Below are positions 1,452 to 27,729 of a stretch of DNA of 50,852 nt, piece by piece. The stretch lies in NCBI GenBank assembly GCA_002269645.1, contig NIVC01004312.1:1-50852 (forward strand), written 5' to 3'. The notes beneath the pieces are model-generated. The model searched no databases. It was not told the origin of the DNA and saw nothing but the letters and a program-made list of their open reading frames with translations. Made by a program: the position numbers and the translations under genes. Every line of letters begins with the position of its first letter. Positions within the stretch are counted from its first letter, which is position 1. Source of the DNA: Macrostomum lignano (Eukaryota).

Positions 1452-4400
1452 ATTTTTATCTCTTCTTTTAAACCATATGGATATGTTTTAATTTTATCAT
1501 CTAAATACCTTTTATCATCAAATGGACTTAATGTTTTTTTATCTGTCTCGATGACAAACATCTGATGCTTTTCTGAATTTAATCGATATTGTGGAGCATG
1601 ATAATTTTCAATTGTATTAAGGTAATCTAAAAGTACGTTTTTATAATCATCAAATGTTATCTTTTTTACTGCTGCTCTTGATACCCCTTTTATTTTTTTT
1701 ACCTCTCCCTCCTGTCCTAAAACCTTAAATGCATAGCATTTGATCTTATTGCTATAAACTCGGTTATGATTTTGCTATTTAATTCATCTTTCATTTTAAG
1801 TACAACTTTTTTATTTTGATCTGATTTTAAAGGATGGTTATCCGGATAGTCGGAGGTATCCAGTGTATCCTTAATTTTTTCCATATCTTTATAGACATCG
1901 AACCTTTGGTTCGTGGGCTTTGCCCGATCATCTGTTTCAACCTTAAATACCAAACTGTCGGTGTCTGCATATATTGGATAGTTATCTGGCCATGTTTTAT
2001 TTATAACATCATAATAGTATTCATACATTACCAGCTTTGCATAATCTAAAACAACCATTCCAATAAATATTGGTTTAAGAAATTTTGTTGTTTTATTTCT
2101 CATATGAATACCCATAAAGTTATCATCAAATTTTATAAAGTCTTTAAAGTTAGGTTTTGAGAAATATTTCTTTGCTTTATCAATATCCTTTTCTAAATGG
2201 AATTGGGTTCTATCTCTAATATTTTCAACCGTTTTTCCATAAAAAGCATTATTCATTAATTTCCAATAATCTTTCTCAAAATTTGTTTTTGACATCTGTC
2301 TCTGATTTGAATTAAAGTCAATATATTTAGCTAACCAATCTTCCTCAATAAACGATATTGTTCGATGTACTTTAGACACTTTTAATCCCTGTTTTTCATA
2401 AAATTGTAGAAGCTTATAATGCACTACATAGTTTTTCTTATCATGTAAATTTAATATTAATTTTTTTGTTGCTAGATGTTTTGCATTATCTACTTTAAGA
2501 TAATCTTTTTGTGTTTGTGATAAATCATCTTCATTAACTGAACAATGCTCTGGAGCTAAAGGATATTTATATGTTTTTGCTTTTGCTTCCCGAGTATATT
2601 GCAAATCCACCTCTACAATACAGCCCCTTCCTTCGGGAATATTTTTGTAATAATCGGGGTCATCTTCCCATTGGAAATCAGCTATTGGTAATTTTTGTTT
2701 CATACAACCACCGTATAAATTGTTTGCATCTAGATATAATACATATGATGATTTTTCTTTTTTATTATAATTTGGAAGATACTTATTATTTACTTTAGTA
2801 TATCTATCTCCTAGTACACCCGAGAATCCGCCGCGAATTCCTCTCTCAATCATTAACAACATATCATGATCAGTTAGTAAATCAATCTTAACATCTGTAT
2901 GTTTCAAACCACAAGCCCATGTTAATCCCGGTGCACTGAAACAATATGCGGGATCAATTTTAAAATTCTCATATGTATGATTCCTAAAGTTTTCAAATGC
3001 ATCAGCTAATAGGAGAACATCTGCTTTAAGATATAGATTATGATAATCTTTAAATGTTTTACAATTAAAGTATTTCCATACTTTTTGAGCGTGTTCATAA
3101 TCCGATTCACTTATATTTGATTGTGATAATGTGGAATAAAACTTTTCTATGGGCGGTAATTCGGTATGAAAAAATACGTCTTCAGATGTTACATATTCAT
3201 ATGGATAGATGCCCTTACGAGTTAATAGCATTAGTTCTTCCTCGGATAGTTTTTCTTTTTGAACGATTCAATAGTATTGGAAAGTTTTTCTTTACTATTT
3301 CTAAATCCCATGGTTTTGGAACTAATGATGAAACAACATTTGCTAAAGATGTTGATAAGAATCTCAAGGAATCTAGAAAAACTAGATGGGAGTATTTCTT
3401 ACCATATGTTATTGATATGTAATTTTCTGATGTTTTAGGTAATATATTTATTTCATATTCATCCTTTCCTAAATGAAGCAATTCTCGAACTAAGAAATGA
3501 AAATCATATCCGGAACCATTATGAAAAAATACTGGTATTTCCTTACATCCTTTTCCTTCTTTTGCATTACATGATCTACATGCTGCCCTCGATAATTTCC
3601 TGTTAGATGACAATGTTCTCGTATCTTATTATTCTTACTTAAATGTCTTTTGCACATAAAACAATTTGTTGCATTTTTATAATTGTCTCTATCCTTATTT
3701 GTCATATTAATATTTTTTGATAATTTATCATATTGATTTTGAATATATTCAAATACATTTACTAATGATTCTGCCATGTGCTTAGCTGCATCATTACCGT
3801 GGTAAGTAATCATCCTTGATTTAAATATATGATCAGCTACAGAGTGTACATATATACAATAACTATTCGGAAACTGTTGTGCCAATTTTTTTGTGCATTC
3901 GTCCCGTAGGGTCGCGTGCTTTGCACGATCCCCATCATCAGATGCCGTCTGTGATTCTTTTAAGGGAACATTTGTTGCTTCAAAATCAGCATATATTACT
4001 ATTGGTTTTTTAACTGCCATATAATGTTGTTGGAACTTTAGGGTTGCATCTTCAGATGCTGGCATTATAGCATTAGTAAATTTGTGATCTAAACAAAATC
4101 GTTGGTGGTTTTTAAGAGCTGTTTCATCCTTTTTAAATGTAAAACAATTTCTACATAGTGGATATCTATTTCTATTTTCTCTTAAAAAAGAACTAATATC
4201 TTTTATGTATATATAATGTGTTTCATTTTCGCGCTGCATGTACAAAAGATCGATTTGATCTGGTGCTGTTATATCAGTTGCTGGCTTAACAAGATAACAC
4301 CTTTTCTTATACCATTCTGGATCGGTTAAAATTTCTTCTAGATCTTTTGGTTCTTCAATTGTAAACACATTAATATTTAAACCATTCATTTTTTCAATCT

Positions 4401-5181
4401 TATATATATCATCTATTGCTACTGGGTATGATATGTTTTTCATTATTATTTCATCCTCATATTGTCTATAATTATATATTTTATTAATGTGTGATTCTAC
4501 TTGATTGTGATATTTATGAATTAATAAACACCATAATAAACATTTATTATCTTTATTGTCTGGATTTATAATCATAGGTGATTTAAATTTGAGCTTCATA
4601 TGTGATCGTCCTTTAAGAATTTCTATAGGTGCAATCTTTACTATTGCTGAATTACAGGATACAAATATAAACCCAGATCCGTTTTCTGTCATCTTATCTA
4701 TCCATTCATCAAACTCAGCTTCTATTTGATCGAATTGATTGTTGTAATTTCCCATTGATAATAATGTTTTATATGATTCTTGTGAAAAGTTATTTATTAC
4801 TTCAATTTCTGAATTTGCATTAAGAATATTTGGTTTTTTAAATTCTGTTTCAACTTCTATTTTATACTTAATTGGCTGTCGTTTGTTATTTGGCCTTATA
4901 GTATAATTGATTAATATGGTCTTTAATTTATCTTTCATTTGTTTAAAATATTCTTTATAATTTGTATTTATATCTATATCTATATATATTACTTCAGCTC
5001 CATTTTGTCCTTGTGGTTGGAGGTTATCAATATCATTTAATTGTCTTTCTAAACGTATCTCATTTTCTGCCCTAATTCTTGCTTCTATTTCAGCCCTATC
5101 GGCAATTCGTTGTGCTTCGATTTGAGCTATTAATTGTGCTCTAAGTTCAGGGTTGTCGATTTGAGCTAAAATTGCTTCCAT
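1448..5181 (-). CDS. polB: Protein-primed family B DNA polymerase (pPolB), about 1244 aa after repairing three single-base indels; N-terminal terminal-protein/OTU-like region, C2H2 finger and EndoVII/HNH insert
   Basis: ExoI YADFE, ExoII HNGSGYDFHFL, ExoIII YLKADVLLLAD, motif A YLDANNLYG, motif B KLMNNAFYGK, motif C YADTDSL. HNH-like CFMC...EHCHLTGNYRG/AACRSCN. Frameshifts: -1 in C-run 3586-3588, +1 in T-runs 3250-3260, -1 in T-run 1739-1741. The repaired C-terminus is RSKCYAFKVLG...KKTLSPFDDKRYLDDKIKTYPYG...EIKI*. Confidence 0.95.
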
Positions 5182-7351: not shown

Positions 7352-8373
7352 CAACTCAGTCACGATGCTTTTTGATTTATGAATGCCTGGACTGCTAAAT
7401 CACAACAGTTATAGGAGAACCTACTGCTTCAGTATATATATTTATATTTTACGAGTTCTATGTGCAGGTATAGTATAGGATAGCATAGCTTATCATAGTT
7501 TCTCTGAACTTTGTTCTTGGTTATATTAATCAGGTAATCAAATATAGATTGGAATACAGTTTATGCTGGGCGGTGTTAATATAAAATTATATATTTATTA
7601 GCGCGTATATTGGGCTGACAGAGACCAGAGGGCTTTCTATTCTAAATAGCCGGTCGATACCATGGACAGCTGTAGTAAAAGGACTCTAAAACTACATGTA
7701 GATTTTATTAGAAAGGAGCTGGAGGCATCGCAAGTAGGGCAGTACGAATCTGATTTTTCTCAAACCGATTTTGTCTATGGTAAAACTCCATCCTCTGCCG
7801 CATTGCCCAACATCGTTAATAGCTGGTCTGCTCTCGACAACATCATTGCTCGCGCAAAAAACTTTGTAGCGCCACCAGTAAAACTGCTGCTGCTGCTGCA
7901 CTGGTGGTCACCTTCTGGGCTTTGCAGCCGTGTTTCTGCTTCTCTGATTTTTGGGTTCCTGCCCTCCCGTTCTTTTGTTTTCTCGTTCGTTAATACGTCC
8001 GTCATTCGATTTATTGACATATTCTTAAATTTTTAACTTCTTTTTAAGCTGATAAATAAACATGTGTTCGTCTTACCTTCAATCAGCCAGCCCCCACATT
8101 TCTTACTCACTAAAGCCGAGTTTCTAGTCCCTTCTTTCTATGGTAAATTTATATCGCAGAAGTCCCTGGCTGAATGCACTGGCAATACGATAAACATACG
8201 TTCCTTACTGGCTCAACCTCATATCTAAGAAAACTGAGTAAAGCCTCCTTTTTACGTCAGGTGTCCACGGTCACAATATTAAAATACTTGTGGAGTTTTA
8301 GGGTTAAAGTTTTTTTTAAACCGAGACATCTTAAACTACTGTCAATTGTCTTTTGACGAAATGAGTTTACAGC

Positions 8374-10332
8374 TTACTGCACACCGATGCAGGCCACCGG
8401 GTGGTACACCCCCCAGCACAGGCTGTACCGACGCCCGCCTCTCTTGTTGAGGCCAGTCGAGGTCAGCACGACTGACGGGATCAACTTCTGCAGGATTCCT
8501 TTTGGCAGGTTATGAGTAGCCTCGACATACTTCAGCTCATGCTTCACGTCGCCCAGCTGAAATTAGTGCAAAAAATATCACAGAATTGCTAAACCGTTGC
8601 AAAACTAGTTTCAAAGACTGCTAAACCAATCTTGACGACTGTTAAACCAATCTTGGCGATTGTTGAACTAATCTTGGCGATTGTTGAACTAATCTTGGCG
8701 ATTGTTGAACTAATCTTGGCGATTGTTGAACTAATCTTGGCGATTGTTGAACTAATCTTGGCGATTGTTGAACTAATCTTGGCGATTGTTGAACTAATCT
8801 TGGCGATTGTTGAACTAATCTTGGCGATTGTTGAACTAATCTTGGCGATTGTTAAACTAATCTTGGCGATTCTTAAACCAATCTTGACGACTGTTAAACC
8901 AATCTTGGCGATTGTTGAACTAATCTTGGCGATTTTTAAACTAATCTTGGCGATTGTAAACCAATCTTGGCGATTGTTAAACCAATCTTCACTATTGTTA
9001 AACTAATCTTGGCGATTGTTAAACTAATCTTGGCGATTGTTAAACCAATCTTGGCGATTATTAAACCAATCTTGGCGATTGTTAAACCAATTTTGGCGAT
9101 TGTTAAACCAATTTTGGCGATTGTTAAACTAATCTTGGAGATTGTTAAACCAATCTTGGCGATTGTTAAACCAATCTTGGCGATTGTTAAACTAATCTTG
9201 GAGATTATTAAACTAATCTTGGAGATTTTTAAACTAATCTTTGTGATTGTTAAACTAATCTTGGAGATTATTAAACTAATCTTGGAGATTGTTAAACTAA
9301 TATTGACGATTGTTAAACTAATCTTGGCGATTGTTAAACCAATCTTGACGATTGTTAAACTAATCTTGGAGATTGTTAAACCAATCTTGGCGATTGTTAA
9401 ACTAATCTTGGAGATTGTTAAACTAATATTGACGATTGTTAAACTAATCTTGGCGATTGTTAAACTAATATTGACGATTGTTAAACTAATATTGACGATT
9501 GTTAAACTAATATTGACGATTGTTAAACTAATCTTGGCGATTGTTAAACCAATCTTGGCGATTGTTAAACTAATCTTGGAGATTGTTAAACCAATCTTGG
9601 CGATTGTTAAACTAATCTTGGAGATTGTTAAACCAATCTTGGAGATTGTTAAACTAATATTGACGATTGTTAAACTAATCTTGGCGATTGTTAAACTAAT
9701 CTTGGCGATTGTTAAACTAATATTGACGATTGTTAAACTAATATTGACGATTGTTAAACTAATATTGACGATTGTTAAACTAATCTTGGCGATTGTTAAA
9801 CCAATCTTGGCGATTGTTAAACTAATCTTGGAGATTGTTAAACCAATCTTGGCGATTGTTAAACCAATTTTGGCGATTGTTAAACTAATCTTGGAGATTG
9901 TTAAACCAATCTTGGCGATTGTTAAACCAATTTTGGCGATTGTTAAACTAATCTTGGAGATTATTAAACTAATCTTGGTGATTGTTAAACTAATCTTGGA
10001 GATTATTAAACTAATCTTGGAGATTGTTAAACTAATCTTGGCGATTGTTAAACTAATCTTGGTGATTGTTAAACTAATCTTGGAGATTGTTAAACTAATC
10101 TTGGCGATTGTTAAACTAATATTGACGATTGTTAAACTAATCTTGGCGATTGTTAAACCAATCTTGGCGATTGTTAAACCAATCTTGGCGATTGTTAAAC
10201 TGATTTTGACGATTGTTAAACCAATCTTGTCACTCTCACCATCAGTTCCAGATTCTTATAGCGGCCAGCTGGCAGAGCCGAAAGCACCGTCGCCAGGCAG
10301 AGCAGAGCGAACGCCAAACCAATGCTGCTCAT
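8374..10332 (-). CDS. Two-exon secreted neuropeptide-like precursor, 91 aa (exons 10332-10240 and 8556-8374)
   Basis: Exon 1 [31 protein letters not shown] (signal peptide) ends at a GTGAGA donor. The TTTCAG acceptor gives phase-0 exon 2 [60 protein letters not shown]. Dibasic sites precede a two-Cys peptide. Confidence 0.85.
8620..10229. repeat. 21-bp minisatellite (AAACTAATCTTGGCGATTGTT)n filling the neuropeptide gene intron
   Basis: Direct inspection; causes the spurious 124-aa and 508-aa ORFs. Confidence 0.97.
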
Positions 10333-10413
10333 CTCGAGTGCTATCTGCAGTTGATGGAGAAAAACTCTGTCCAGTTATTGAGAAGATAGCAAGAGAGAGT
10401 GGAGAGTCTGGGC

Positions 10414-10448
10414 GAATGAAATTCTCGCTCCGAGTTGTTGCCTTTATA
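10414..10448 (-). promoter_or_regulatory. TATA box plus initiator of the neuropeptide-like gene
   Basis: TATAAAGG with first T at 10448 and TCATTC with A at 10417, i.e. TATA at -31, the canonical spacing. Confidence 0.75.
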
Positions 10449-10727
10449 GGCAAGCAGATCAAAAGGCCTGCATGGAACCCCCAGCTCTGTTAGTATCGGT
10501 TTTGTATTATAGAAATCAAAGAAATGCTTCGGTGTCTCAGGTGGCGTGCAAAATTGTGAACGATGCTCGCCTTTTTTTCTGTAGTTCTCTTTTCACCTGC
10601 CCACGTGGTTTTTTTGAAATAATCTTTTTTACCAACGAATAGCAGCAGTAAGAGCTTGTGATAAACAAATCCCCAGTTTCTGCAAGATGGAAAATTGCTG
10701 CGACTATGGGAATTAAAGAAGATGAAG

Positions 10728-11158
10728 TCTCCTGTTCTATCCCTGTTCTATCCCTGTTCCATCCCTGCTCTATCCCTGTTCTATTCCTGTTCTATCCCTG
10801 TTCTATCCCTGTTCCATCCCTGCTCTATCCCTGTTCTATTCCTGTTCTATCCCTGTTCTATCCCTGTTCCATCCCTGCTCTATCCCTGTTCTATCCCTGT
10901 TCCATCCCTGCTCTATCTCTGTTCTATTCCTGTTCTATTCACTGTTCTATCCCTGTTCCATCCCTGCTCTATCCCTCTTCTATTCCTGTTCTATTCACTG
11001 TTCTATCCCTGTTCCATCCCTGCTCTATCCCTGTTCTATTCCTGTTCTATCCCTTTTCTATCCCTGTTCCATCCCTGTTCTATCCCTGTTCTATCCCTGT
11101 TCTATCCCTTTTCTATCCCTGTTCTATCCCTGTTCTACTCCTGTTCTACTCCTCTGTT
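10728..11158. repeat. ~11-bp minisatellite (CCCTGTTCTAT)n
   Basis: Direct inspection. Confidence 0.95.
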
Positions 11159-11562
11159 CTACTTAATTTTTTCCAAATCGCGTGTATGTCTCCTTACCTA
11201 CTCTTCCATAGCCATTGCTTTGCTCTGTGGTCTAAATTTTCCTGTTGTGATGCAAAATTTTCAGGCATAAAAATGTTCCAGAATAAAGATCCTCTATAGG
11301 AATTTTCTATTCCTAGAGCTCGTAATCGCTAGCCCTGCTTGTGCGTCATTCGGGGTTCGCCGGGTCTACAGGTGGCAGCTGAAGCACCAATAGGCACTCA
11401 AAGCGAGGAAAATGCACCTGAGGGACACGGGGTGGATAAGTTAGAGGCGCCATTACATAGAGCTGCTCTTCATCGCTCTTCATCGCTGGCCATCTGGGCT
11501 GCCAGTTGCGCTGGGCTGGAATCCCAGAAACCGCTTTCGTAGCACCGGAACCTGACTTAGTC

Positions 11563-13453
<1,891 letters not shown>

Positions 13454-13681
13454 CTTTTGTCTCCGTTTTTTGTCTTCTGCAACCTGATTTCGATAAGTAG
13501 CAAGTGGAACGCCATGAGGAAAGCAAATAACATTTTTGCGATATTTCATCAACCTTTATGATATGATATTTAAAAAAAACCATCGATGGCATTGCAGATC
13601 AATTTCCTAGAAATATTACTCTCAGTAGGCAGGTAAGTGTCAGTCTCGAAAAAAGTATTTAGACAGACAGATAGATAGATA

Positions 13682-13919
13682 TACTCAGCAACATCGAAAA
13701 TTCGCCACTACGTAAGATTCCGTCTGGTCGCCAATTTTGAGAGTGCAGGTAGAGTCTCTAAATCTTGCGAGTGACGCAACTTAGCTACGCCACGCGGCAG
13801 ACTTGGGTTGAGGAATGAAGTGGGGGGAGCGGTGTGCGAGGGTTAAACGACGGATTAAAGTTACCCCTCAGTTTTCTCGTATCTTTTATTTCAGATAAGT
13901 CCAAGAGAGTTGCTGAGTA
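13682..13919. mobile_element. 238-bp Tc1/mariner-type MITE inserted into a (GATA)n tract
   Basis: 11-bp TIR TACTCAGCAAC/GTTGCTGAGTA flanked by TA on both sides; removing the element and one TA restores a perfect GATA array. Confidence 0.75.
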
Positions 13920-14687
<768 letters not shown>

Positions 14688-15338
14688 AATCAACAGGAAT
14701 GAACAGTTTCCAAAGTGCTTGCAACACTGCATTGCTCCATCCCTGATCTCAAGAGTTCAGACAAATGTCACTTTTTTTTAAAACAGAAGTTCCTCAAATT
14801 TCGACTCTGAGCGATGACAAGCCAAATCCACAGGGGAAGCTGGGCTGAGGAAATGCGAAGAGATGGAGAGTCAGTCAGCCGCAGAATATCTGTGCTGCTA
14901 ATCAAATATCACGCAGGATGCACTTTCTCTCCCCTGCCTGCCTGGCGCTGCTGTTTCCCCTCTCCCCTTTTTTCTCCCCGCAGGCGATTTGGCCATTCGG
15001 CCTTCGAATAGGGCGAGGGGAAGGCGTTGTCATGGCAACTAGCAGAGCTTGGGGAGCAGACTAAGGCGCTTTACTTCGTCTATGAGACGGCGCTTGGCTT
15101 TCTTCCCCGATTTCTCTCAGACCCGAAGCCAGCCAAATCCCAACTGGGCTCTGGTCTGCGTGACCTGACAAGTTCAATTTTCAGTTTAAAAGCGGCAGCG
15201 TAAGTTTAGACAGATAATGTTTTTAGTAGTGTAAACACAATGTTAATAATTGTTTGCATGCGTGTGAACAGAAACATTTAGTTTGCATGGAAACTTTAAG
15301 ACAGTTATTGCCATTGTTACAAGCATATTTAGATTGTT

Positions 15339-15609
15339 GTTGCCATGGAGACAAGCATACTGAGATTTGTTGTTGCCATTGCGACAAGCATACTGAGATT
15401 TGTTGTTGCCATGGAGACAAGCATACTGAGATTTGTTGTTGCCATGGAGACAAGCATACTGAGATTTGTAGTTGCCATTGAGACAACAATATCAGGATTG
15501 TTGTTGTCATGGCGACAAATTGTGATTGTTGTTGCCATGGAGACAAGCGTATTGAGATTGTTGTTACCATGGAGACAAGGCATTTTGAGATTGTCGTTGC
15601 CACGAGGAC
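15339..15609. promoter_or_regulatory. ~33-bp tandem repeat, each unit carrying an RFX X-box-like motif (GTTGCCATGGAGAC)
   Basis: Nine motif copies, at 15339, 15372, 15405, 15438, 15471, 15503, 15531, 15563 and 15596, plus a lone GTTGTCATGGCAAC at 15026. Confidence 0.55.
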
Positions 15610-16110
15610 AAACATCCTCAATATCTATACGATTGCACAGTCCAAGGTGTCAAATCAACCAAGGAGGGAAATATAAAATGCAGGCACAAGAACTAGACAA
15701 CCTCAGAACACCCTAAGGTGACCCTAAGGTGACTAAGGTGACCCACACTACTATGCAACAACTGAACAACAACAACAACAACAACAACAACAAATTGGAC
15801 CAACATGAACAGCGTGAAAAAACAATCCTAATTGGAGTGTTGCACCATTTCCGAAAATATCTCCAAAGTTTCTTTTTCAACAGGTTAGAAGGAGGGACAC
15901 CGTAGAAAGGCAAGACCATCACAGGTCATTCGAGGTCTTTCGCCATGATTCTTATGCACCCTGCCAGTAACTTTATCAGTAACAAACTTGCTAATCAAAC
16001 GACTAATGAGATTTTTAGGGCAGGTCTTTTCGCACTCAATGTTGATTTTAAGCTTAATTAACAATAATTAATTAACGATATTGCAGCCAGAGTCAGCCGG
16101 AGCCGCTCCC

Positions 16111-16986
16111 ATGGCCTCGGTCAGCCCCATCGCCTCCGTCGAGCAGTTCAGCGCAGATCTCCGCTCGTTGAACCGCTGCCTCGCCCAGTGCAAACTGCTG
16201 CTCCGCCAGCTCGGCACCCAGGTGGACGGTCGGCGACTTCGCGACGAGCTTCAATCGCTCCTGCTGGACCGCCTGCTAGCCGGGCTGTACACCGCCCGCG
16301 ATGCCATCCTGCCCGTCATGCTGCACACTGCGGACGATGGCAGCCCAGCCAGGCGGGACTGGGAGGCCCGCTACGCCACCCTGGTGCAGACGGCCGAGTC
16401 CGCCATAGACAATGCCGACCGGACAGCCGCTCTGGTGGCCAGAGCTCGGCCGGGTCAGCCGCCGGTGCTGACGGGCGTCACCGAGGCCTTCCGCACCGGC
16501 CGCAGGTCCATCTTCGGGCTGGGCGGCGGCGGCAGCGTTGGCGGCGGCAGCCGGGCCAGCTCCCTCAGATCGTCACGCCGCGGCTCCGTGTCGCGGGCGT
16601 CGCTGGCCAATCCGGACGCCGACGCTTCGGGTCCCTCGTCGGCGGCCGCTTCGACAACTGCTGCCGCGTCCGTCGAGGAAGCTGCATCGACCAACGTTGA
16701 GGAGGCGCTGGCGGAGCTCCGTCGCGAGACCGCTTCGGCTCGTGGGCTTGTTGAGCAGCTGCAGTCGGCTGTCAGCGTGGCGCACTGGACGGTGCAGCAC
16801 AGTCTGGAACTGGACTCGCTGTCTGCCGACGGTCTCGACGATGGCGACGATGATGGGGGTGATGAGGATCGAACAGCGGCAGCGGAAGCGGTGTCGGGGC
16901 GGAGAGATTCAAGGCGGTTTAGTCGGGCGAACGGAGGCGGCGGCAGCAACGGAGGCGGCCTGGGTGCCTGCGTTTGGTGCAAGTGA
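16111..16986 (+). CDS. RGS7-binding/RGS9-anchor (R7BP/R9AP)-like protein, 291 aa, single coding exon
   Basis: N-terminal syntaxin-like helices (LNRCLAQCKLLLRQLGTQVDGRRLRDELQ). C-terminal basic stretch then cysteines (RRDSRRFSR...ACVWCK*), as in palmitoylated R7BP. GC-rich codon use; AG acceptor at 16085-16086 just upstream. Confidence 0.7.
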   Translation: MASVSPIASVEQFSADLRSLNRCLAQCKLLLRQLGTQVDGRRLRDELQSLLLDRLLAGLYTARDAILPVMLHTADDGSPARRDWEARYATLVQTAESAIDNADRTAALVARARPGQPPVLTGVTEAFRTGRRSIFGLGGGGSVGGGSRASSLRSSRRGSVSRASLANPDADASGPSSAAASTTAAASVEEAASTNVEEALAELRRETASARGLVEQLQSAVSVAHWTVQHSLELDSLSADGLDDGDDDGGDEDRTAAAEAVSGRRDSRRFSRANGGGGSNGGGLGACVWCK

Positions 16987-16991
16987 CTGCG

Positions 16992-17273
16992 CACGGAGTG
17001 AGACACGGAGTGAGACACGGAGTGAGACACGGAGTGAGACACGGAGTGAGACACGGAGTGAGACACGGAGTGAGACACGGAGTGAGACACGGAGTGAGAC
17101 ACGGAGTGAGACACGGAGTGAGACACGGAGTGAGACACGGAGTGAGACACGGAGTGAGACACGGAGTGAGACACGGAGTGAGACACGGAGTGAGACACGG
17201 AGTGAGACACGGAGTGAGACACGGAGTGAGACACGGAGTGAGACACGGAGTGAGACACGGAGTGAGACACGGA
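16992..17273. repeat. 12-bp tandem repeat (CACGGAGTGAGA)n starting 5 bp after the stop codon
   Basis: Direct inspection. Confidence 0.97.
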
Positions 17274-18189
17274 GCTTTAGCTTAAAAAACTGGAATTCTT
17301 CTATCTCGCTAGACTGCAGATTTGGCCTTCAATTGTAATTTTCACAAATTTGAAGTTCGACGCCCTCTCAATACTGTGCGATGCTTATTTAAAATCGTAC
17401 GCAGTGTCCGTATTCTTATAACGTATCCTTTTTCTACATGTTTTCTATCCTTTTCAATAAGCCTGATGTCAGCCAGGCTTAATATACTTATACTTGTATT
17501 CTTTTTACCATACAATTCTATAGAGACTTGGACTAGAAGCCATTTTTTCCAAGAACCATGGACAACGTTTTTCTTAGAAATGAGCTTGGGGCGGTAAGGA
17601 ACGGATATTCGTCGCATCGAATCAAAATTGAATTCTGATAAAGAAATCGTAGACTCTGGCTGGCTTCCAGACCAATTATCCATGGATCCTTGATTTCCAT
17701 GCACTGAGCATCGGTTTCTCAGCTCCTGATCTTCCACTCAAGGACCACGTGAGTAGTAATAATAATAAGGTGGAACACTTGGAGATTATGGCATTTTTTA
17801 TAATATACTTTACTAGCTATCTCCAGCAACTAAAGATTATGTGTAATTTTCCAACTGGGTATGAAAAAGACACATAAAAGTGCACTCTACCGATTTTTGT
17901 CCGTCTGTCTGTCATTTAAATTTTGCTCTCACTAATTTAGACGCTTGTCTTAACTTAGCGAGGCTCAACTAAACTCTGTCACTGCCGGGCGCAGAGCTCG
18001 CGGAGAGTCTAACTTTTAAAATGGAAGCTTTTAAAAGACAGAGAGAGAGAAAGATTGGTGAAGAAGGCTGGGGATGGCGTCAGGGTTGAAGTGTCGAGGC
18101 GACTTAATTGACTCTTGAAGACAGGCAGACAGGGCGTTTGGGATTGGAAGCGACAGGGGAAAATAATTTAGATTTGGAGTGGGGACAGA

Positions 18190-19010
18190 GAGGGAGATAA
18201 GGAGGATGAATAAGGAGAGGGAGATAAGGAGAGGTACATGAGGAGAGGGAGATAAGGAGAATGAATAAGGAGAGGGAAATAAGGAGAATGAATAAGGAGA
18301 GGGAGATAAGGATAATGAATAAGGAGAGGGAGATAAGGAGAATGAATAAGGAGAGGGAAATAAGGAGAATGAATAAGGAGAGGGAGATAAGGAGAATGAA
18401 TAAGGAGAGGGAGATAAGGAGAGGTACATGAGGAGAGGGAGATAAGGAGAGGTAGATGAGGAGAGATAGATGAGGAGAGGTACATAAATAGAGGTACATA
18501 AGGAGAGGTAGATGAGGAGAGATAGATGAGGAGAGGTACATAAATAGAGGTAGATGAGGAGAGGTAGATGAGGAGAGGTACATAAGGAGAGGTAGGTAAG
18601 GAGAGGTACATAAGGAGAGGTAGATGAGGAGAGGTACATAAGGAGAGGTAGATAAGGAGAGGTACATAAGGAGAGGTAGATAAGGAGAGGGAAATGAGGA
18701 GAGGTACATAAGGAGAGGTACATAAGGAGAGGGAGATGAGGAGAGGTACATAAGGAGAGGTAGGTAAGGAGAGGTACATAAGGAGAGGTAGGTAAGGAGA
18801 GGTACATAAGGAGAGGTAGATGAGGAGAGGTACATAAGGAGAGGTAGGTAAGGAGAGGTAGATGAGGAGAGGTACATAAAGAGAGGTAGATAAGGAGAGG
18901 TACATAATGAGAGGTAGATGAGGAGAGGTACATAAGGAGAGGTAGATGAGGAGAGGTACATAAATAGAGGTAGATGAGGAGAGGTACATAAGGAGAGGTA
19001 GATGAGTGGA
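18190..19010. repeat. Purine-rich minisatellite (GGAGAGGTAGATGA-type units)
   Basis: Direct inspection. Confidence 0.95.
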
Positions 19011-19505
19011 GAGAGACAATGCGATCAAGTCCCAACTGAGCTCACTACAGAAGCACTAATATTCGTGCCCCACAGTCGCAGCACGAAGCAACAATTTACC
19101 TGACAATTAACAAAGAATAATCACACTGCGCACGGAAATGCCCTGCGTTCAGCCTGGAGGGAGAGGGGTTGGCAGATTTCCGCTACTCCCCCTGCTTAAG
19201 ATTTCTCACTGAGTCTCAAGGCGTATTCAAGGACCCGACTTATAATCCCCGTTCTTCCCTCCGGTCGCTCCTGTCTAACCGCTCTAATTAATTATCCCTT
19301 CAGGCTTCCTGCGTGCCCCCTCAAGCCGCTAGACTCCTCGCTCTTACTCACGAGCCGGCCGGACAGAGGTGGAACCCGGCAGGCAGGTAAAGGCGCTTTA
19401 ATGGAACGGCTTTTATGGCTAAAAAACTCGATTGCACGCACTGATTTCGCTTATGCTCGGTACTTTTTAAAGGGACTTTTTAGCTCTTAGCTCGATTCTA
19501 GCTGA

Positions 19506-20998
19506 GGATTGAGGACCCTGAGTCCTTCACGGCTCTCTTATCTGAGGACCCGAGTCCTTCACGGCTCTCTTATCTGAGGACCAGAGTCTTTCACGGCTCT
19601 CTTATCTGAGGACCCGACTCCTTCACAGCTCCCTTATCTGAGAACCCGTCTTTCACGGCTCTCTTATCTGAGGACCCGAGTCCTTCACGGCTCCCTTATC
19701 TGAGAACCCGTCTTTCACGGCTCTCTTATCTGAGGACCCGAGTCCTTCACGGCTCTCTTATCTGAGGACCCAAGTCCTTCACGGCTCTCTTATCTGAGGA
19801 CCAGAGTCCTTCACGGCTCTCTTATCTAAGGACCAGAGTCCTTCACGGCTCTCTTATCTGAGGACCAGAGTCCTTCACGGCTCTCTTATCTGAGGACCCG
19901 AGTCCTTCACGGCTCTCTTATCTGAGGACCAGACTCCTTCACGGCTCTCTTATCTGAGGACCAGAGTCCTTCACGGCTCTCTTATCTAAGGACCAGAGTC
20001 CTTCACGGCTCTCTTATCTGAGGACCAGAGTCCTTCACGGCTCTCTTATCTGAGGACGCGAGTCCTTCACGGCTCTCTTATCTGAGGACCCGAGTCCTTC
20101 ACGGCTCTCTTATCTGAGGACCAGAGTCCTTCACGGCTCTCTTATCTAAGGACCAGAGTCCTTCACGGCTCTCTTATCTGAGGACCAGAGTCCTTCACGG
20201 CTCTCTTATCTGAGGACCAGAGTCCTTCACGGCTCTCTTATCTGAGGACCCGAGTCCTTCACGGCTCTCTTATCTGAGGACCAGACTCCTTCACGGCTCT
20301 CTTATCTGAGGACCAGAGTCCTTCACGGCTCTCTTATCTGAGGACCAGAGTCCTTCACGGCTCTCTTATCTGAGGACCCGAGTCCTTCACGGCTCTCTTA
20401 TCTGAGGACCCGAGTCCTTCACGGCTCTCTTATCTGAGGACCAGACTCCTTCACGGCTCTCTTATCTGAGGACCAGAGTCTTTCACGGCTCTCTTATCTA
20501 AGGACCAGAGTCCTTCACGGCTCTCTTATCTGAGGACCAGAGTCCTTCACGGCTCTCTTATCTGAGGACCAGAGTCCTTCACGGCTCTTATATCTGAGGA
20601 CCAGAGTCCTTCACGGCTCTTATATCTGAGGACCAGAGTCCTTCACGGCTCTCTTATCTGAGGACCAGAGTCCTTCACGGCTCTCTTATCTGAGGACCAG
20701 AGTCCTTCACGGCTCTCTTATCTGAGGACCAGACTCCTTCACGGCTCTCTTATCTGAGGACCAGAGTCCTTCACGGCTCTTATATCTGAGGACCAGAGTC
20801 CTTCACGGCTCTCTTATCTGAGGACCAGAGTCCTTCACGGCTCTCTTATCTGAGGACCAGACTCCTTCACGGCTCTCTTATCTGAGGACCAGACTCCTTC
20901 ACGGCTCTCTTATCTGAGGACCAGAGTCCTTCACGGCTCTCTTATCTGAGGACCAGAGTCCTTCACGGCTCTCTTATCTGAGGACCAGAGTCCTTCAC
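19506..20998. repeat. 32-bp minisatellite (TGAGGACCAGAGTCCTTCACGGCTCTCTTATC)n
   Basis: Head-to-tail units with no spacers. Confidence 0.97.
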
Positions 20999-21855
20999 GT
21001 CCATTTATCCCATATCATGTCCTTGATATTTGACATATTATCTGAGGACCATGGCTACTCAAATTTCCTCAAAATCTGAGCAACATAAATGCAGTTCTTA
21101 CAATAATCCAAGGCCGAACTTTCCTCGAAATGTTGAGCTGCTGGAAGCACCTGTGATAGATTAGATGGTTCAGATAGAAATCCCAGAGATGTCCCCCAGT
21201 CTTTTCTCCGCATTCCCCCCTCCAAGATTCGAATCGCATCAAACTAAACTAGGAAATTTAGGATTATATTTTGCCACCTGTTTGTTCCAAGTCAGGTGTT
21301 CAATGAGCCAACTTATTTAATTTATCAAATCTTTTTACAGAGTCACGATTCACTATTCACAGAGATTCAATTCCATAATTGCTTTGGACTTTCTCTCTAA
21401 GTCCCAGGTAACCTAGGGATGCTGAAGGTTCAGGCCATATGGTGCATGAAATTTCCCGCGAGTTAAGGACTTCCTGTCTAGCTTAGCAGAATACTGAACT
21501 CAGATTGTAAGCAGAAAATACAAGAAGGAAATAAAGACAGACTCATATACCAGTTGAACATATCAAAGCTGTTTTATAGGAGTTAAGGGTTGACAGTTCC
21601 GAATCCCTAGTCCGCAGTTAATCCAAGCGCTGCGCTAGCTCGTACTGCAAGCGGATTATAAAAAACGTTTCCTTTGATGAAAAGCGAAATCGAGGGTACA
21701 AAAAATGACTTTGACTTTTCCCAATTAAATGAAGATCTCAATGATCCTACAGATAAGAGTAGATTCCACTGATTTAAATCTGATCACGACTTCTATTTTA
21801 TTCCGCTGGTTTTTGAACCATTCATCGTCGTGACAGACCGAAACAGCTAAAATAC

Positions 21856-21920
21856 AGACCGACAGACAGACAGACAGACAGAAAGACAGACAGACAGAAA
21901 GACAGACAAAAAGACAGACG

Positions 21921-21952
<32 letters not shown>

Positions 21953-21967
21953 CACACACACAGACAC

Positions 21968-22003
<36 letters not shown>

Positions 22004-22005
22004 TC

Positions 22006-22076
<71 letters not shown>

Positions 22077-22083
22077 AAGACAA

Positions 22084-22119
<36 letters not shown>

Positions 22120-22165
22120 TCAGACAGACAGACACACAGACAGACAGACAGACACACAGACAGAC

Positions 22166-22208
<43 letters not shown>

Positions 22209-22297
22209 GTCAAACAGACAGAAGACACACAGACAGACAGACAGACAGACAGACAGTCAAACAGACAGAAGACACACAGACAGACAGACAGACAGAC

Positions 22298-22344
<47 letters not shown>

Positions 22345-22437
22345 GTCAAACAGACAGAAGACACACAGACAGACAGACAGACAGACAGACAGTCAAACAG
22401 ACAGAAGACACACAGACAGACAGACAGACAGACAGAC

Positions 22438-22480
<43 letters not shown>

Positions 22481-22526
22481 GTCAAACAGACAGAAGACAC
22501 ACAGACAGACAGACAGACAGACAGAC

Positions 22527-22573
<47 letters not shown>

Positions 22574-22606
22574 GTCAAACAGACAGAAGACACACAGACA
22601 GACAGA
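21856..22606. repeat. (CAGA)n microsatellite
   Basis: Direct inspection. Confidence 0.97.
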
Positions 22607-23089
22607 TGGCAAAAAGAAGCAACGGGGAATTCAAGAACAGCAAGCCAGTTATCGCATAATGCAGTTAAGGCATCAAAGCCGAACGCGTCCTGCTATCAAT
22701 AGTACAAACATTACTCCAACACAGTTTTAATTAATTTATTTCTGCAGACAGTTGAGCCGTTCAGCGCCTTCACAAATGGTAGCACGGGAGTCCCGCGCCA
22801 ATAAGTTCAAGCATAAATAATATAAAAAGTTTGAGTAAGAAACCTGTGCAACTTAGTGCGAGTCAGTGGAAGTTAGAGCGCAATAAATCATTACAAAGTA
22901 CAAAATGAAGCAACATAAAGCATTTCTAGGCACGAGAAAGATTTGAACTCAGAAACTCACTGATAGGCAGGTAAGGAAGGAAAGTCGCAATCGAAAAAAA
23001 GTTGGTACTACTCAAATATCGACAAAGTACAAAGGTGCCAGTGAAAGCGACTCAAAATTTACGCAGTGCAACTGATCAACTTTGGTCAC

Positions 23090-23601
23090 TTGTAGATCAG
23101 GGGGGGTCAGTTGATCAGGTGGGTCAGTAGATCTAGTGGGTCAGTAAATCAGGTGGGTCAGCTGATCAGGTGGGTTAGTAGATCAGGTGGGTCAGATGAT
23201 CAGGTGGGTTAGTAGATCATGTGGGTCAGATGATCAGGTGGGTTAGTAGATCAGGTGGGTCAGATGATCAGGTGGGTCAGATGATCAGGTGGGTCAGATG
23301 ATAAGGTGGGTCAGTAGATCAGGTGAGTCAGTTGGTCAGTAGATTAGGTGGGTCAGTAGATCAGGTGGGTCAGTAGATTAGGTGGGTCAGTAGATCAGGT
23401 GGGTCAGTAGATTAGGTGGGTCAGTAGATCAGGTGGGTCAGTAGATTAGGTGGGTCAGCCGATCTAGTGGGTCAGTAGATTAGGTGGGTCAGATGATCAG
23501 GTGGGTCAGCTGATAAGGTGGGTCAGTAGATCAGGTGAGTCAGTTGGTCAGTAGATCTAGTGGGTCAGTAGATCAGGTGGGTCAGTAGATCAGGTGGGTC
23601 A
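23090..23601. repeat. 17-bp minisatellite (TCAGGTGGGTCAGTAGA)n
   Basis: Direct inspection. Confidence 0.95.
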
Positions 23602-24361
23602 ATAGCGGAAGTCTACCAGAGCAAGTCAAAGTACAAGTGGATACAAATAAGTAGTCTGCGTTGATTTTTAAGAAATAAATTTCCAAGAATAGGCATTCCA
23701 ACATTTTACTTTCTCAATCATTCTATAAGTCTGCACTAGAAATCTTTTTGAACCAATACAGCACCAAAAATTGAATGAATTTTCTATATCTACTACTACT
23801 TTATCAACTACTTGTAGTACTAAATTACCGACAAATACATAAAAAAAACAGATCAAGTGGAATGGTTTTAACAGACTTTATCAATTATGTTACTGTTAAA
23901 GAATTAAATAATAATTTAGAAAGATAAATTAAAAGTCAGTAAAATGTATAAGTAGTCAGTTACCTAGAACAATTGTGGAACCAAAGGATGGCAATGCTGC
24001 ATTTTTATCGGTTTAACTTTTTTAATCCAAAATATCTGATTTATTAAACAGTGCTGTGACACAACAGTTTTGTCCGAATCAAATGAACTAAATTAACAAA
24101 GCGCAAGCAAAGCATAAAGCAAAGGTCAATCAGGAAAAGTTGCTCTCTACATAAAAACATTGCTACTTACGTCGTACTTATAGTAGTCAGTCAATTTGTA
24201 AACTGTAACAAAGTCATTCAACTAATCACTGCTAGAATAACACACGCTAGTAAAATGTGGCATCGCATACAGGAAACGACAAACGAGAAATGACGCCGCA
24301 ATCCTAATTAGCTGCAGGAGAAGTGTAACAGAGAAAAGGGACTGAAAAGTGTGTCCTGAAT

Positions 24362-24429
24362 TGTCTGTCTGTCTCTGCATGTCTGCCTGCCTGTCTGTCC
24401 GTCTGTCTTTCCGTCTGTCCGTTTGTCTT

Positions 24430-24466
<37 letters not shown>

Positions 24467-24467
24467 G

Positions 24468-24498
<31 letters not shown>

Positions 24499-24531
24499 AT
24501 GTCTGTCTGTGTGTCTGTCTGTCTGTCTGTG

Positions 24532-24602
<71 letters not shown>

Positions 24603-24615
24603 ATGTCTGTCTGTG

Positions 24616-24691
<76 letters not shown>

Positions 24692-24716
24692 GGTCTGTTT
24701 ATCTGTCTGCCTGCCT
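24362..24716. repeat. (TGTC)n microsatellite
   Basis: Direct inspection. Confidence 0.97.
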
Positions 24717-24805
24717 GTCGGGGCTTGAAACCAAACCCCTGAAAACAAGCGCTACAAGCGATAGCCAGCAGAAACCTAATGTCATCACCAAATGCAGACA
24801 GTCCA

Positions 24806-27729
<2,924 letters not shown>

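What the first reader, a model, noticed from the sequence alone, without database searches (positions are those of the whole stretch)
8374..10448. Unannotated neuropeptide precursor with a C-terminal disulfide-loop peptide
Seen: TATA/Inr, signal peptide, phase-0 intron, then KR-GG-RR followed by [17 protein letters not shown] at the C-terminus. The ORF track misses the gene because exon 1 is short and exon 2 has no start codon. Established: one C-terminal Cys-bridged peptide after basic residues is the layout of somatostatin, allatostatin-C and MCH precursors. Inference: the 8-residue loop with G-VY-P resembles MCH (CMLGRVYRPC) and the PVAC end resembles AST-C (NPISC), so it may be an informative family member or a new family.
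Basis: partly seen in the sequence, partly recalled or inferred. Interest (0 to 1): 0.78.

Follow-up and report, generated by a model that had tools for sequence, protein, structure and literature searches.

The report
Flatworm allatostatin-C-like peptide hormone gene
This is a real-looking two-exon gene of the flatworm Macrostomum lignano for a small secreted prohormone whose C-terminal 17-residue disulfide-loop peptide most resembles allatostatin-C; public databases already hold the protein, but only as an unnamed "secreted protein".

Summary
The described anatomy is all present on the minus strand. It has a TATA box and Inr, an ATG at 10332, and a 31-codon exon 1 with a signal-peptide-like hydrophobic core. 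A phase-0 GT..AG intron (10239..8557) is filled by a 21-bp minisatellite. Exon 2 (8556..8374) ends in [23 protein letters not shown]-stop.

The spliced 91-aa product is 100% identical to UniRef A0A1I8HWD5, "Secreted protein", Macrostomum lignano. So the gene model is already public, but no function has been assigned. A paralogue carries the identical peptide.

No orthologue outside M. lignano was found. Transcript evidence could not be obtained with these tools.

Against published peptide sets, the 17-mer matches allatostatin-C best: Y-x-x-C-[WY]-(GV)-[YF]-[HN]-P-[VI]-[AS]-C-[IF]. The chance probability is about 0.001-0.005 for ecdysozoan ASTC. Elevenin (0.03-0.2), MCH (0.08-0.46) and somatostatin (about 0.7) are not above chance.

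The precursor layout also fits the published hallmarks of somatostatin/ASTC-type genes: one peptide at the C-terminus and a phase-0 intron in the N-terminal part. The 8-residue loop (protostome ASTC has 6) and the GVQ tail are atypical.

Verdict: probable divergent ASTC-type prohormone. Moderate interest; family membership unproven.

The parts
10443..10448 (-). TATA box (TATAAA)
   Evidence: Read directly from the sequence. It lies 31 nt upstream of the Inr-like A.
10414..10419 (-). Inr-like element TCATTC; inferred transcription start at about 10417
   Evidence: Read directly. There is no ATG between here and 10332. The start site is inferred, not shown.
10240..10332 (-). Exon 1 coding part, 31 codons: [31 protein letters not shown]
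   Evidence: Translation. An in-frame stop lies 12 codons upstream. Identical to residues 1-31 of UniRef A0A1I8HWD5.
10276..10332 (-). Predicted signal peptide (about residues 1-19 or 1-22; cleavage site not determined)
   Evidence: Uncharged 14-residue core [14 protein letters not shown]. The maximum Kyte-Doolittle 11-residue mean is 2.73, at residue 4. The UniRef name is 'Secreted protein'. SignalP was not available.
8557..10239 (-). Single phase-0 intron, 1683 nt, GT..AG
   Evidence: Donor ATG|GTGAGA and acceptor TTTTTTGCACTAATTTCAG|CTG. The junction reproduces the public 91-aa protein exactly.
8622..10229 (.). 21-bp minisatellite filling the intron (76.6 copies, 92% matches)
   Evidence: Tandem Repeats Finder. 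It also creates a spurious 508-aa ORF on the + strand.
8374..8556 (-). Exon 2 coding part, 60 codons plus the TAA stop (8376..8374)
   Evidence: Translation.
8446..8556 (-). Exon-2 part of the propeptide (residues 32-68; the propeptide begins in exon 1), with no internal dibasic site
   Evidence: Five of the six differences from paralogue P0002 fall in the propeptide (four of them in this exon-2 part); the sixth is in the signal peptide.
8428..8445 (-). Processing site KR-GG-RR (residues 69-74)
   Evidence: Codons AAG AGA GGC GGG CGT CGG read directly. Cleavage itself is inferred.
8377..8427 (-). Predicted mature peptide [17 protein letters not shown] (residues 75-91). Cys78 (8418..8416) and Cys87 (8391..8389) would close a ring with 8 residues between them.
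   Evidence: Identical in paralogue P0002. Best alignment is to ASTC. Calculated oxidised [M+H]+ is 1892.882.
8010..8015 (-). First canonical AATAAA downstream of the stop (358 nt); possible polyadenylation signal
   Evidence: Pattern scan. Its use is not shown.

Best explanation
The locus is a two-exon gene of Macrostomum lignano encoding a 91-residue secreted prohormone.

Proposed mechanism:
1. The signal peptide from exon 1 directs the protein into the secretory pathway.
2. A prohormone convertase cuts at the KR-GG-RR site. Because the stop codon follows directly, no C-terminal trimming or amidation is needed.
3. The product is a single 17-residue peptide, [17 protein letters not shown], cyclised by a Cys78-Cys87 disulfide.
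4. By precursor layout, intron phase and peptide sequence, it is most likely a divergent member of the allatostatin-C (ASTC / echinoderm SS1) branch of the somatostatin/ASTC superfamily.
5. If so, it would act as a neuropeptide or peptide hormone on a rhodopsin-type GPCR of the SS/ASTC receptor group.

Shown: the gene anatomy, identity to a public gene model, identity of the peptide in a paralogue, and similarity to ASTC above chance.

Inferred: transcription, secretion, cleavage, disulfide formation, neuronal expression, the receptor, and family membership.
For: - Anatomy read from the sequence.
- The spliced product is 100% identical over 91 of 91 residues to UniRef A0A1I8HWD5, 'Secreted protein', M. 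lignano. An independent annotation therefore chose the same ATG, junction and stop.
- Paralogue A0A1I8GGZ1 differs at 6 of the first 68 residues but at none of the 23 residues [23 protein letters not shown].
[quoted passage not shown] The FXP core appears here as YHP.
- Alignment to Drosophila/Manduca-type ASTC, QVRYRQCY--FNPISCF against [17 protein letters not shown], gives Y(-3), C, P and C identical. W/Y, Y/F, H/N, V/I, A/S and I/F are conservative.
- The spacing from FXP to the second Cys is in register with protostome ASTC. The spacing C-x-G-x-[FY]-x-P from the first Cys is in register with echinoderm SS1 peptides such as KCIGRFQPFSMPC.
- Best-score tests against ecdysozoan ASTC give p=0.003-0.005 with 2000 Cys-fixed shuffles under three gap settings. 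They give p=0.001 against 20000 random C-x8-C peptides.
- Elevenin, MCH, SS2/SS and SS1 are not significant on the same best-score measure.
- Aplysia ASTC ends ...NVVACY, and the candidate ends its loop ...HPVACI.
Against: - No transcript, peptide or expression data could be reached. The exact-sequence look-ups found no encoding contig.
- No orthologue outside M. lignano was found in 5.8 billion or 1.84 billion protein collections.
- The loop has 8 residues between the cysteines. Every protostome ASTC in the published lists has 6, so the alignment needs a 2-residue gap.
- Spiralian ASTCs are phylogenetically the closest comparators. They lack the Pro and match only weakly (p 0.02-0.2).
- ASTC normally ends one residue after the second Cys; here four residues (IGVQ) follow. 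That C-x-G-V tail looks like elevenin instead.
- The ecdysozoan ASTC set is nearly one sequence repeated. Five or six families were tried, so the corrected significance is only about 0.01-0.03.
- The conservation contrast between paralogues is not significant (Fisher p=0.33).
- None of the ASTC synteny neighbours listed for Pecten in the supplement of PMC8851493 is in the window.
Confidence: 0.45

Rival explanations
1. It is a genuine processed Cys-loop neuropeptide, but one specific to the Macrostomum or flatworm lineage. The ASTC-like look would then be convergence on an aromatic-x-Pro turn inside a disulfide ring, not homology to ASTC, elevenin or MCH.
For: - No homologue outside M. lignano in two very large protein searches.
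- Loop length and C-terminal tail fit no single family cleanly.
- The [FY]-x-P loop motif occurs in ASTC, SS1, elevenin and MCH alike, so it is a weak discriminator.
- Flatworm neuropeptidomes are described as rich in lineage-specific peptides and poor in ancestral ones (PMC13551398).
Against: - The match to ecdysozoan ASTC is above chance at about 0.001-0.005.
- It extends outside the loop, to Tyr at -3 and a hydrophobic residue after the second Cys.
- The phase-0 intron and the single C-terminal peptide are the SS/ASTC gene signature.
Confidence: 0.25
2. It is a secreted small protein or peptide with a non-neuronal role, for example a gland, seminal-fluid or defence product. It may not be processed at the basic sites at all.
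For: - Only a signal peptide and basic residues are actually seen, and no expression data are available.
- The 'dibasic, Cys loop, stop' motif occurs by chance a few times in the same window.
- Planarian prohormone genes are also expressed in glands and reproductive organs (PMC2953531).
Against: - Two dibasic sites sit immediately before a short Cys-loop C-terminus.
- There is a single product and ASTC-like residues.
- The peptide is near-neutral and hydrophobic (pI 6.7, GRAVY 0.84), unlike cationic antimicrobial peptides.
Confidence: 0.12
3. It is an elevenin (L11)-type peptide whose precursor has lost the usual long C-terminal part.
For: - It has the same 8-residue loop as all 38 published elevenins.
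- It shares V-[FY]-H-P as in Platynereis PDCTRFVFHPSCRGVAA, and a C-x-G-V tail as in C-R-G-V or the bivalve C-L-G-V (PMC10175484).
- G17 and V18, which are important for Aplysia receptor activation, are present.
Against: - The Pro and the aromatic residue are shifted by one position, so two gaps are needed.
- The conserved D5 and R16 are absent.
- The elevenin HMM score is 4.4 bits, and 56 of 5000 Cys-fixed shuffles do as well.
- Pairwise tests give p=0.03-0.2.
- Elevenin lies directly after the signal peptide in a precursor of about 150 aa, not at the C-terminus.
Confidence: 0.08
4. It is an MCH-type peptide.
For: It has an 8-residue loop, a C-terminal position in the precursor, and G-(R)-V-Y-(R/H)-P in common with CMLGRVYRPC. 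The MCH sequences were taken from memory.
Against: - The shared residues are out of register by two positions, and the Arg within GRVY is missing.
- Alignment scores are at chance (p=0.08-0.46).
- The review read here reports MCH-type precursors outside chordates only in an echinoderm and mentions none in protostomes (PMC5818035).
Confidence: 0.03
5. It is not a functional gene but a chance ORF pair, or a pseudogene, picked up by an automatic annotator.
For: - There is no transcript evidence here.
- A third public model (P0003) carries a frameshifted copy fused to unrelated exons.
- The region is extremely repeat-rich.
Against: - Promoter, first-ATG context, signal peptide, canonical splice sites and GC-rich exons are all coherent.
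- Two intact copies keep the open frame and an identical peptide.
Confidence: 0.05

Closest known systems
Allatostatin-C (ASTC) of protostomes, e.g. Manduca/Drosophila pQVRYRQCYFNPISCF and Aplysia SHYSSMCMFNVVACY
   Same: - A signal peptide, one propeptide and a single Cys-bridged peptide at the very C-terminus after a dibasic site.
- A phase-0 intron in the N-terminal coding part.
- The residue pattern Y-x-x-C-aromatic...[FY]-[NH]-P-[IV]-[SA]-C-hydrophobic.
   Different: - 8 rather than 6 residues between the cysteines (an extra G-V).
- Three further residues (GVQ) beyond the single hydrophobic residue that normally ends ASTC after the second Cys.
- Spiralian ASTCs lack the Pro.
- The receptor is unknown.
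- No ASTC-type peptide was found reported for flatworms in the papers read here.
Echinoderm SS1-type (ASTC-type) peptides, e.g. Asterias ArSS1 KCIGRFQPFSMPC
   Same: C-x-G-x-[FY]-x-P counted from the first Cys is in exact register. The peptide is C-terminal, and the gene has a phase-0 N-terminal intron. These peptides also show that loop length varies within the ASTC-type family (10 residues there).
   Different: The second half of the loop is two residues shorter here. The basic residue after Gly is missing. SS1 genes have an extra phase-1 intron. The statistical support is weak (p 0.04-0.18).
Elevenin (L11), e.g. Platynereis PDCTRFVFHPSCRGVAA and Crassostrea ...FCETYPFAPRCLGVAA
   Same: An identical loop size (8), V-[FY]-H-P inside the loop, and C-x-G-V after it.
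   Different: The motif is shifted by one residue and D5/R16 are absent. Elevenin sits right after the signal peptide in a longer precursor. Similarity is not above chance.
Melanin-concentrating hormone (DFDMLRCMLGRVYRPCWQV)
   Same: An 8-residue loop, a C-terminal position and V-Y-x-P.
   Different: The motif is out of register by two and the Arg is missing. No MCH-type peptide was found reported from protostomes in the papers read here. Similarity is at chance level.
Somatostatin / urotensin II / protostome SSRP-like peptides (FWK or WK core)
   Same: A C-terminal Cys-loop peptide and a phase-0 first intron.
   Different: There is no W-K core, no second phase-1 intron splitting the peptide as in mollusc/annelid SSRP-like genes, and alignment p is about 0.7.

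Membership tests
Somatostatin/allatostatin-C-type precursors | N-terminal signal peptide | tested here: met
   Hydrophobic core [14 protein letters not shown] with a KD(11) maximum of 2.73 at residue 4. UniRef names the protein 'Secreted protein'. SignalP itself was not run.
Somatostatin/allatostatin-C-type precursors | A single bioactive peptide derived from the C-terminal end of the precursor, preceded by a basic cleavage site | tested here: met
   KR-GG-RR is followed by 17 residues and the stop. There is no other dibasic site in the precursor. Criterion from PMC8851493 and PMC8786951.
Somatostatin/allatostatin-C-type precursors | Two cysteines forming one disulfide bridge in the peptide | tested here: met
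   Cys78 and Cys87 are the only cysteines after the signal peptide. Actual bridge formation is not testable here.
Somatostatin/allatostatin-C-type precursors | [quoted passage not shown] | tested here: met
   The intron lies between codon 31 (ATG) and codon 32 (CTG). Criterion from PMC7536072.
Allatostatin-C type (including echinoderm SS1) | FXP core motif inside the loop | tested here: inconclusive
   Y-H-P is present, with Tyr in place of Phe. It is in register with ASTC counted from the second Cys and with SS1 counted from the first Cys. Spiralian ASTCs themselves lack the Pro.
Allatostatin-C type (protostome) | Six residues between the two cysteines | tested here: not met
   There are eight residues (WGVYHPVA). 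All 20 listed protostome ASTCs have six. Echinoderm ASTC-type peptides have ten, so the feature is not universal in the wider family.
Allatostatin-C type | Peptide similarity above chance | tested here: inconclusive
   Ecdysozoan ASTC gives p=0.001-0.005. Spiralian ASTC gives 0.02-0.2 and SS1 gives 0.04-0.18. The peptides are short, the reference set is redundant, and several families were tried.
Allatostatin-C type | Activates an SS/ASTC-type GPCR | not testable with these tools
Allatostatin-C type | Conserved synteny with ASTC neighbours | tested here: not met
   The window holds SPT-like, XPD-like and class-C GPCR exons and a polB relic. It holds none of the Pecten ASTC neighbours listed in the supplement of PMC8851493. 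This is weak evidence, because only 50 kb was examined.
Elevenin | C-x8-C loop | tested here: met
   There are eight residues between the cysteines, as in all 38 listed elevenins.
Elevenin | Conserved D5, F11, P13, R16, G17, V18 (Aplysia numbering) | tested here: not met
   G17 and V18 are present. D5 is Leu. R16 is Ile (bivalves have Leu). The aromatic residue and the Pro are displaced by one position. HMM score 4.4 bits, with 56 of 5000 shuffles as good.
Elevenin | Peptide immediately after the signal peptide, followed by a long C-terminal remainder | tested here: not met
   Here the peptide is the last 17 residues of a 91-aa precursor. In Aplysia it follows the signal peptide in a 151-aa precursor.
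Melanin-concentrating hormone | C-M-[LV]-G-R-V-Y-R-P-C ring with its conserved Arg and Tyr | tested here: not met
   The ring size is the same but the residues are out of register and no Arg is present. Alignment p=0.08-0.46.
Somatostatin / SSRP-like | FWK / WK core | tested here: not met
   There is no W-K. Alignment p is about 0.64-0.93.

The most novel reading that the evidence does not exclude
The peptide may be a surviving intermediate form. It combines the ASTC/SS1 core and precursor layout with the elevenin/MCH ring size and the elevenin C-x-G-V tail. That would point to a common origin of the [FY]-x-P disulfide-loop peptides (ASTC, elevenin, possibly MCH), and would give flatworms a first ligand for testing which receptor clade it uses.
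Probability: 0.07. Interest if true: 0.65.

Novelty: new member of a known kind. Interest (0 to 1): 0.38.

Why it matters
Flatworm neuropeptide repertoires are described as incompletely sampled and as having lost many ancestral bilaterian peptides (PMC13551398). In the papers I could read, no ASTC-, somatostatin-, elevenin- or MCH-type ligand is reported for Platyhelminthes.

A confirmed ASTC-type peptide in Macrostomum lignano would fill that gap. This species is an early-branching and genetically tractable flatworm. Confirmation would also show that ASTC loop length is not fixed at six residues in protostomes. It would supply a synthetic ligand for deorphanising flatworm SS/ASTC-like receptors, which are of interest as drug targets in parasitic relatives.

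If the peptide turns out to be lineage-specific, it is one more orphan flatworm prohormone and of local interest only.

Tried and rejected
- **Exact-sequence look-up of encoding contigs.** I tried the 91-aa product and paralogue P0002 and found nothing on record. No RNA-seq or genomic copy could therefore be examined.
- **Word-seeded homology search.** It returned only the M. lignano cluster.
- **Full HMMER scan of 1.84 billion representatives.** It returned the query itself, P0003 and P0004. P0003 is a chimeric M. lignano model carrying a frameshifted copy. P0004 is a repeat protein matching only the propeptide. No orthologue was found.
- **Pfam on the precursor.** No family matched.
- **Literature string searches.** Searches for the peptide and the UniProt accessions gave 0 papers. 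Searches for flatworm ASTC or elevenin reports found none. McVeigh et al. 2009 is not held, and Koziol et al. 2016 could not be consulted.
- **Elevenin HMM.** HMMER local alignment on 16 columns is a poor instrument. It gave 4.4 bits with an empirical p of 0.011. I replaced it with global pairwise tests.
- **Six-frame background.** C-x8-C segments from the window numbered only 27, too few to be useful.
- **Supplementary files of PMC8851493.** They hold accessions, not peptide sequences.
- **Rfam and tRNA scans of the window.** Both were empty.
- **M. lignano SS/ASTC receptor search.** I considered and rejected it. A search by homology cannot be restricted by taxon, and no reliable query sequence was at hand.
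Full report
**1. What is in the sequence**

I read 8200..10700 on the minus strand.
- A TATAAA box lies at 10448..10443. An Inr-like TCATTC follows at 10419..10414, with its A 31 nt downstream of the TATA start.
- The first ATG after that is at 10332, and an in-frame stop lies 12 codons upstream.
- Exon 1 (10332..10240) encodes [31 protein letters not shown].
- Exon 1 is followed by the donor GTGAGA.
- The acceptor is TTTTTTGCACTAATTTCAG|CTG, so exon 2 starts at 8556.
- Exon 2 encodes [60 protein letters not shown]-stop. The stop is at 8376..8374.
- The intron lies between two codons, so it is phase 0.
- The intron is almost entirely a 21-bp minisatellite, 8622..10229, 76.6 copies. This also explains a spurious 508-aa ORF on the + strand.
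- The mechanical ORF list holds exon 1 as 38 aa and exon 2 as a 57-aa GTG-start ORF. Both are below the usual 60-aa cut-off.
- The exons have 51-58% GC against about 35% around them.

**2. Is it more than chance?**

The motif 'dibasic, Cys loop, stop' is not rare by itself. The six-frame translation of the window has three or four other stop-free instances, in satellites and GC-rich DNA.

The case rests on the combination of that motif with a core promoter, a first-ATG context, a signal-peptide-like N-terminus and canonical splice signals. The N-terminus has a Kyte-Doolittle 11-residue maximum of 2.73 at residue 4.

It also rests on an independent result. The spliced 91-aa protein is 100% identical, end to end, to UniRef A0A1I8HWD5_9PLAT, 'Secreted protein', Macrostomum lignano.
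- This identifies the organism.
- It shows that a public annotation chose the same start, junction and stop.
- It means the gene is not unannotated in the public sense. It only lacks a functional name.

No paper in the searchable library contains the peptide string or the accessions.

**3. Relatives**

The 90% cluster holds a second M. lignano protein, A0A1I8GGZ1 (P0002, 100 aa).
- It differs at six positions (6, 26, 31, 33, 42, 68), all upstream of the processing site.
- It is identical over [23 protein letters not shown].
- This contrast fits selection on the peptide but is not significant (Fisher p=0.33).
- P0002 continues with YFNIVTMDN. A near-identical YFNIVTVDT-stop is encoded about 90 nt downstream of the stop in this window. 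The paralogue's model probably splices on an extra exon where its stop is lost.

A full HMMER scan of 1.84 billion representative proteins found only three hits.
- The first is the query itself.
- The second is P0003, a 541-aa chimeric M. lignano model. Its C-terminus is a frameshifted copy of this gene, fused to exons that correspond to window ORFs at 24806..25330 and 16455..17270.
- The third is P0004, a repeat protein that matches only the propeptide.

No orthologue outside M. lignano was found. Exact-sequence look-ups for encoding contigs also failed.

**4. Which family does the peptide resemble?**

I collected published peptide sets.
- 38 elevenins (PMC10175484, Supplementary Table 1).
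- 20 protostome ASTCs (PMC8786951, Supplementary Table 3).
- Echinoderm SS1 and SS2 peptides, plus further ASTC and SS sequences (PMC7536072, Supplementary Figure 4).

*Elevenin.* It shares the 8-residue loop, V-[FY]-H-P and a C-x-G-V tail. However, the aromatic residue and the Pro are displaced by one position. The conserved D5 and R16 are missing. Elevenin also sits directly behind the signal peptide in a precursor of about 150 aa.

*MCH.* It shares the ring size and V-Y-x-P, but the motif is two positions out of register and the Arg is absent.

*ASTC.* It gives the most coherent alignment, QVRYRQCY--FNPISCF against [17 protein letters not shown].
- Tyr at -3, both Cys and the Pro are identical.
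- W/Y, Y/F, H/N, V/I, A/S and I/F are conservative.
- The spacing [FY]-x-P-x-x-C is in register with protostome ASTC.
- The spacing C-x-G-x-[FY]-x-P is in register with echinoderm SS1 (ASTC-type) peptides such as KCIGRFQPFSMPC.

**5. Statistics**

I scored global BLOSUM62 alignments in two ways. The first used 2000 shuffles of the candidate with the cysteines held fixed, under three gap settings. The second used 20000 random C-x8-C peptides of average composition.

| Family | Shuffle test, p | Random C-x8-C peptides, p |
|---|---|---|
| Ecdysozoan ASTC | 0.003-0.005 (best score) | 0.001 |
| Spiralian ASTC | 0.09-0.21 | 0.025 |
| Echinoderm SS1 | 0.04-0.18 | 0.08 |
| Elevenin | 0.03-0.20 | 0.13 |
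| MCH | 0.08-0.46 | 0.35 |
| SS2/SS | about 0.64-0.93 | not run |

An elevenin HMM gave 4.4 bits, and 56 of 5000 shuffles did as well.

So only the ASTC similarity is above chance, and modestly so. The ecdysozoan reference set is nearly one sequence, and five or six families were tried. The corrected level is about 0.01-0.03.

**6. Precursor and gene structure**

The literature defines SS/ASTC-type precursors by four features.
- One Cys-bridged peptide from the C-terminal end of the precursor.
- A single peptide per gene.
- An FXP core in ASTC/SS1-type peptides, or an FWK core in SS-type peptides.

These criteria come from PMC7536072, PMC8851493 and PMC8786951. The gene here meets the first three and has YHP for FXP.

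It fails the protostome rule of six residues between the cysteines. It also has a longer tail after the second Cys: IGVQ, where ASTC has a single hydrophobic residue.

Protostome SSRP-like genes have a second, phase-1 intron splitting the peptide, and a W-K core. Neither is present here.

No ASTC synteny neighbour listed for Pecten lies in the window. Over only 50 kb this counts for little.

**7. Best explanation and rivals**

The most likely reading (about 0.45) is a secreted prohormone. It would be cut at KR-GG-RR to release one 17-residue disulfide-cyclised peptide. The calculated oxidised [M+H]+ is 1892.882. The peptide would be a divergent ASTC-type ligand acting through an SS/ASTC-type GPCR. 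Secretion, cleavage, cyclisation, neuronal expression and the receptor are all inferred.

The rivals are as follows.
- A lineage-specific Cys-loop neuropeptide that only converges on the aromatic-x-Pro ring: 0.25.
- A non-neuronal secreted product: 0.12.
- An elevenin-type peptide with a truncated precursor: 0.08.
- A mis-predicted or dead gene: 0.05.
- An MCH-type peptide: 0.03.

**8. Novelty and interest**

The papers I could read on flatworm neuropeptides list no ASTC-, somatostatin-, elevenin- or MCH-type ligand. These include a 2026 review and polyclad and planarian surveys. They describe flatworm repertoires as under-sampled and depleted of ancestral peptides.

I rate the finding as a new member of a known kind. 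It is of moderate interest to neuropeptide-evolution and flatworm researchers, and ordinary otherwise.

**9. Context noted in passing**

- The left end of the window (1..~5200, 28% GC) carries a frameshifted family-B DNA polymerase. All six canonical motifs occur in order.
- XPD-like helicase exons, SPT-like aminotransferase exons and a class-C GPCR lie to the right.
- More than thirty satellite arrays fill the window.

Noticed in passing
window 1717..5181, minus strand (ORFs 3490-5181, 3215-3613, 1717-3231): An AT-rich block (28% GC, against 40-50% elsewhere) encodes a family-B DNA polymerase split over three reading frames. All canonical motifs occur in order: ExoI YADFEA, ExoII NGSGYDFHF, ExoIII YLKADVLL, A DANNLYG, B KLMNNAFYG, C YADTDS. 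It looks like a decayed protein-primed polB of a Maverick/Polinton-like element or an integrated virus. Pfam, PHROGs and PDB sequence searches found nothing.
   Followed up: partly
window 8446..8556 (propeptide residues 36-55) versus protein P0004: The propeptide stretch [19 protein letters not shown] matches seven repeats, HELKHVE[PT]THDASKP, of an unnamed 354-aa repeat protein. The library-wide E-value is 4e-5, and each single repeat scores only 20-26 bits. The LK-x-VE-x-TH look recalls beta-thymosin/WH2 LKHVET motifs, but Pfam gives no support. It is probably a summed-repeat coincidence.
   Followed up: partly
window about 8256..8285, minus strand: YFNIVTVDT-stop is encoded about 90 nt downstream of the gene's stop. 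It matches the C-terminal extension YFNIVTMDN of paralogue A0A1I8GGZ1. This suggests an optional or paralogue-specific third exon. In this copy, a CA|GTAAGC donor-like site overlaps the stop codon.
   Followed up: no
window 8374..25330, minus strand, versus protein P0003: A public 541-aa M. lignano gene model is a chimera. Its N-terminus equals the aminotransferase (SPT-like) ORF at 24806..25330. Its middle equals an ORF at 16455..17270 that runs into a 12-bp satellite. Its C-terminus is exon 1 plus exon 2 of the peptide gene read through two frameshifts. It is likely an annotation or assembly artefact of another copy.
   Followed up: partly
window 31357..34601, minus strand: Exons of an XPD/ERCC2-type helicase: DEAD_2 at E=1e-15 and Helicase_C_2 at E=5e-40.
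   Followed up: partly
window 44836..45345 and 49584..49940, minus strand: Exons of a class-C GPCR, metabotropic-glutamate-like: 7tm_3 at E=3e-41 and the NCD3G cysteine-rich domain at E=2.5e-10.
   Followed up: partly
whole window, e.g. 11573..13447 (CTAA x468), 19510..20999 (32-bp unit x47), 8622..10229 (21-bp unit x77): More than thirty micro- and minisatellite arrays lie in 50 kb. Many of them generate long spurious ORFs on both strands.
   Followed up: no
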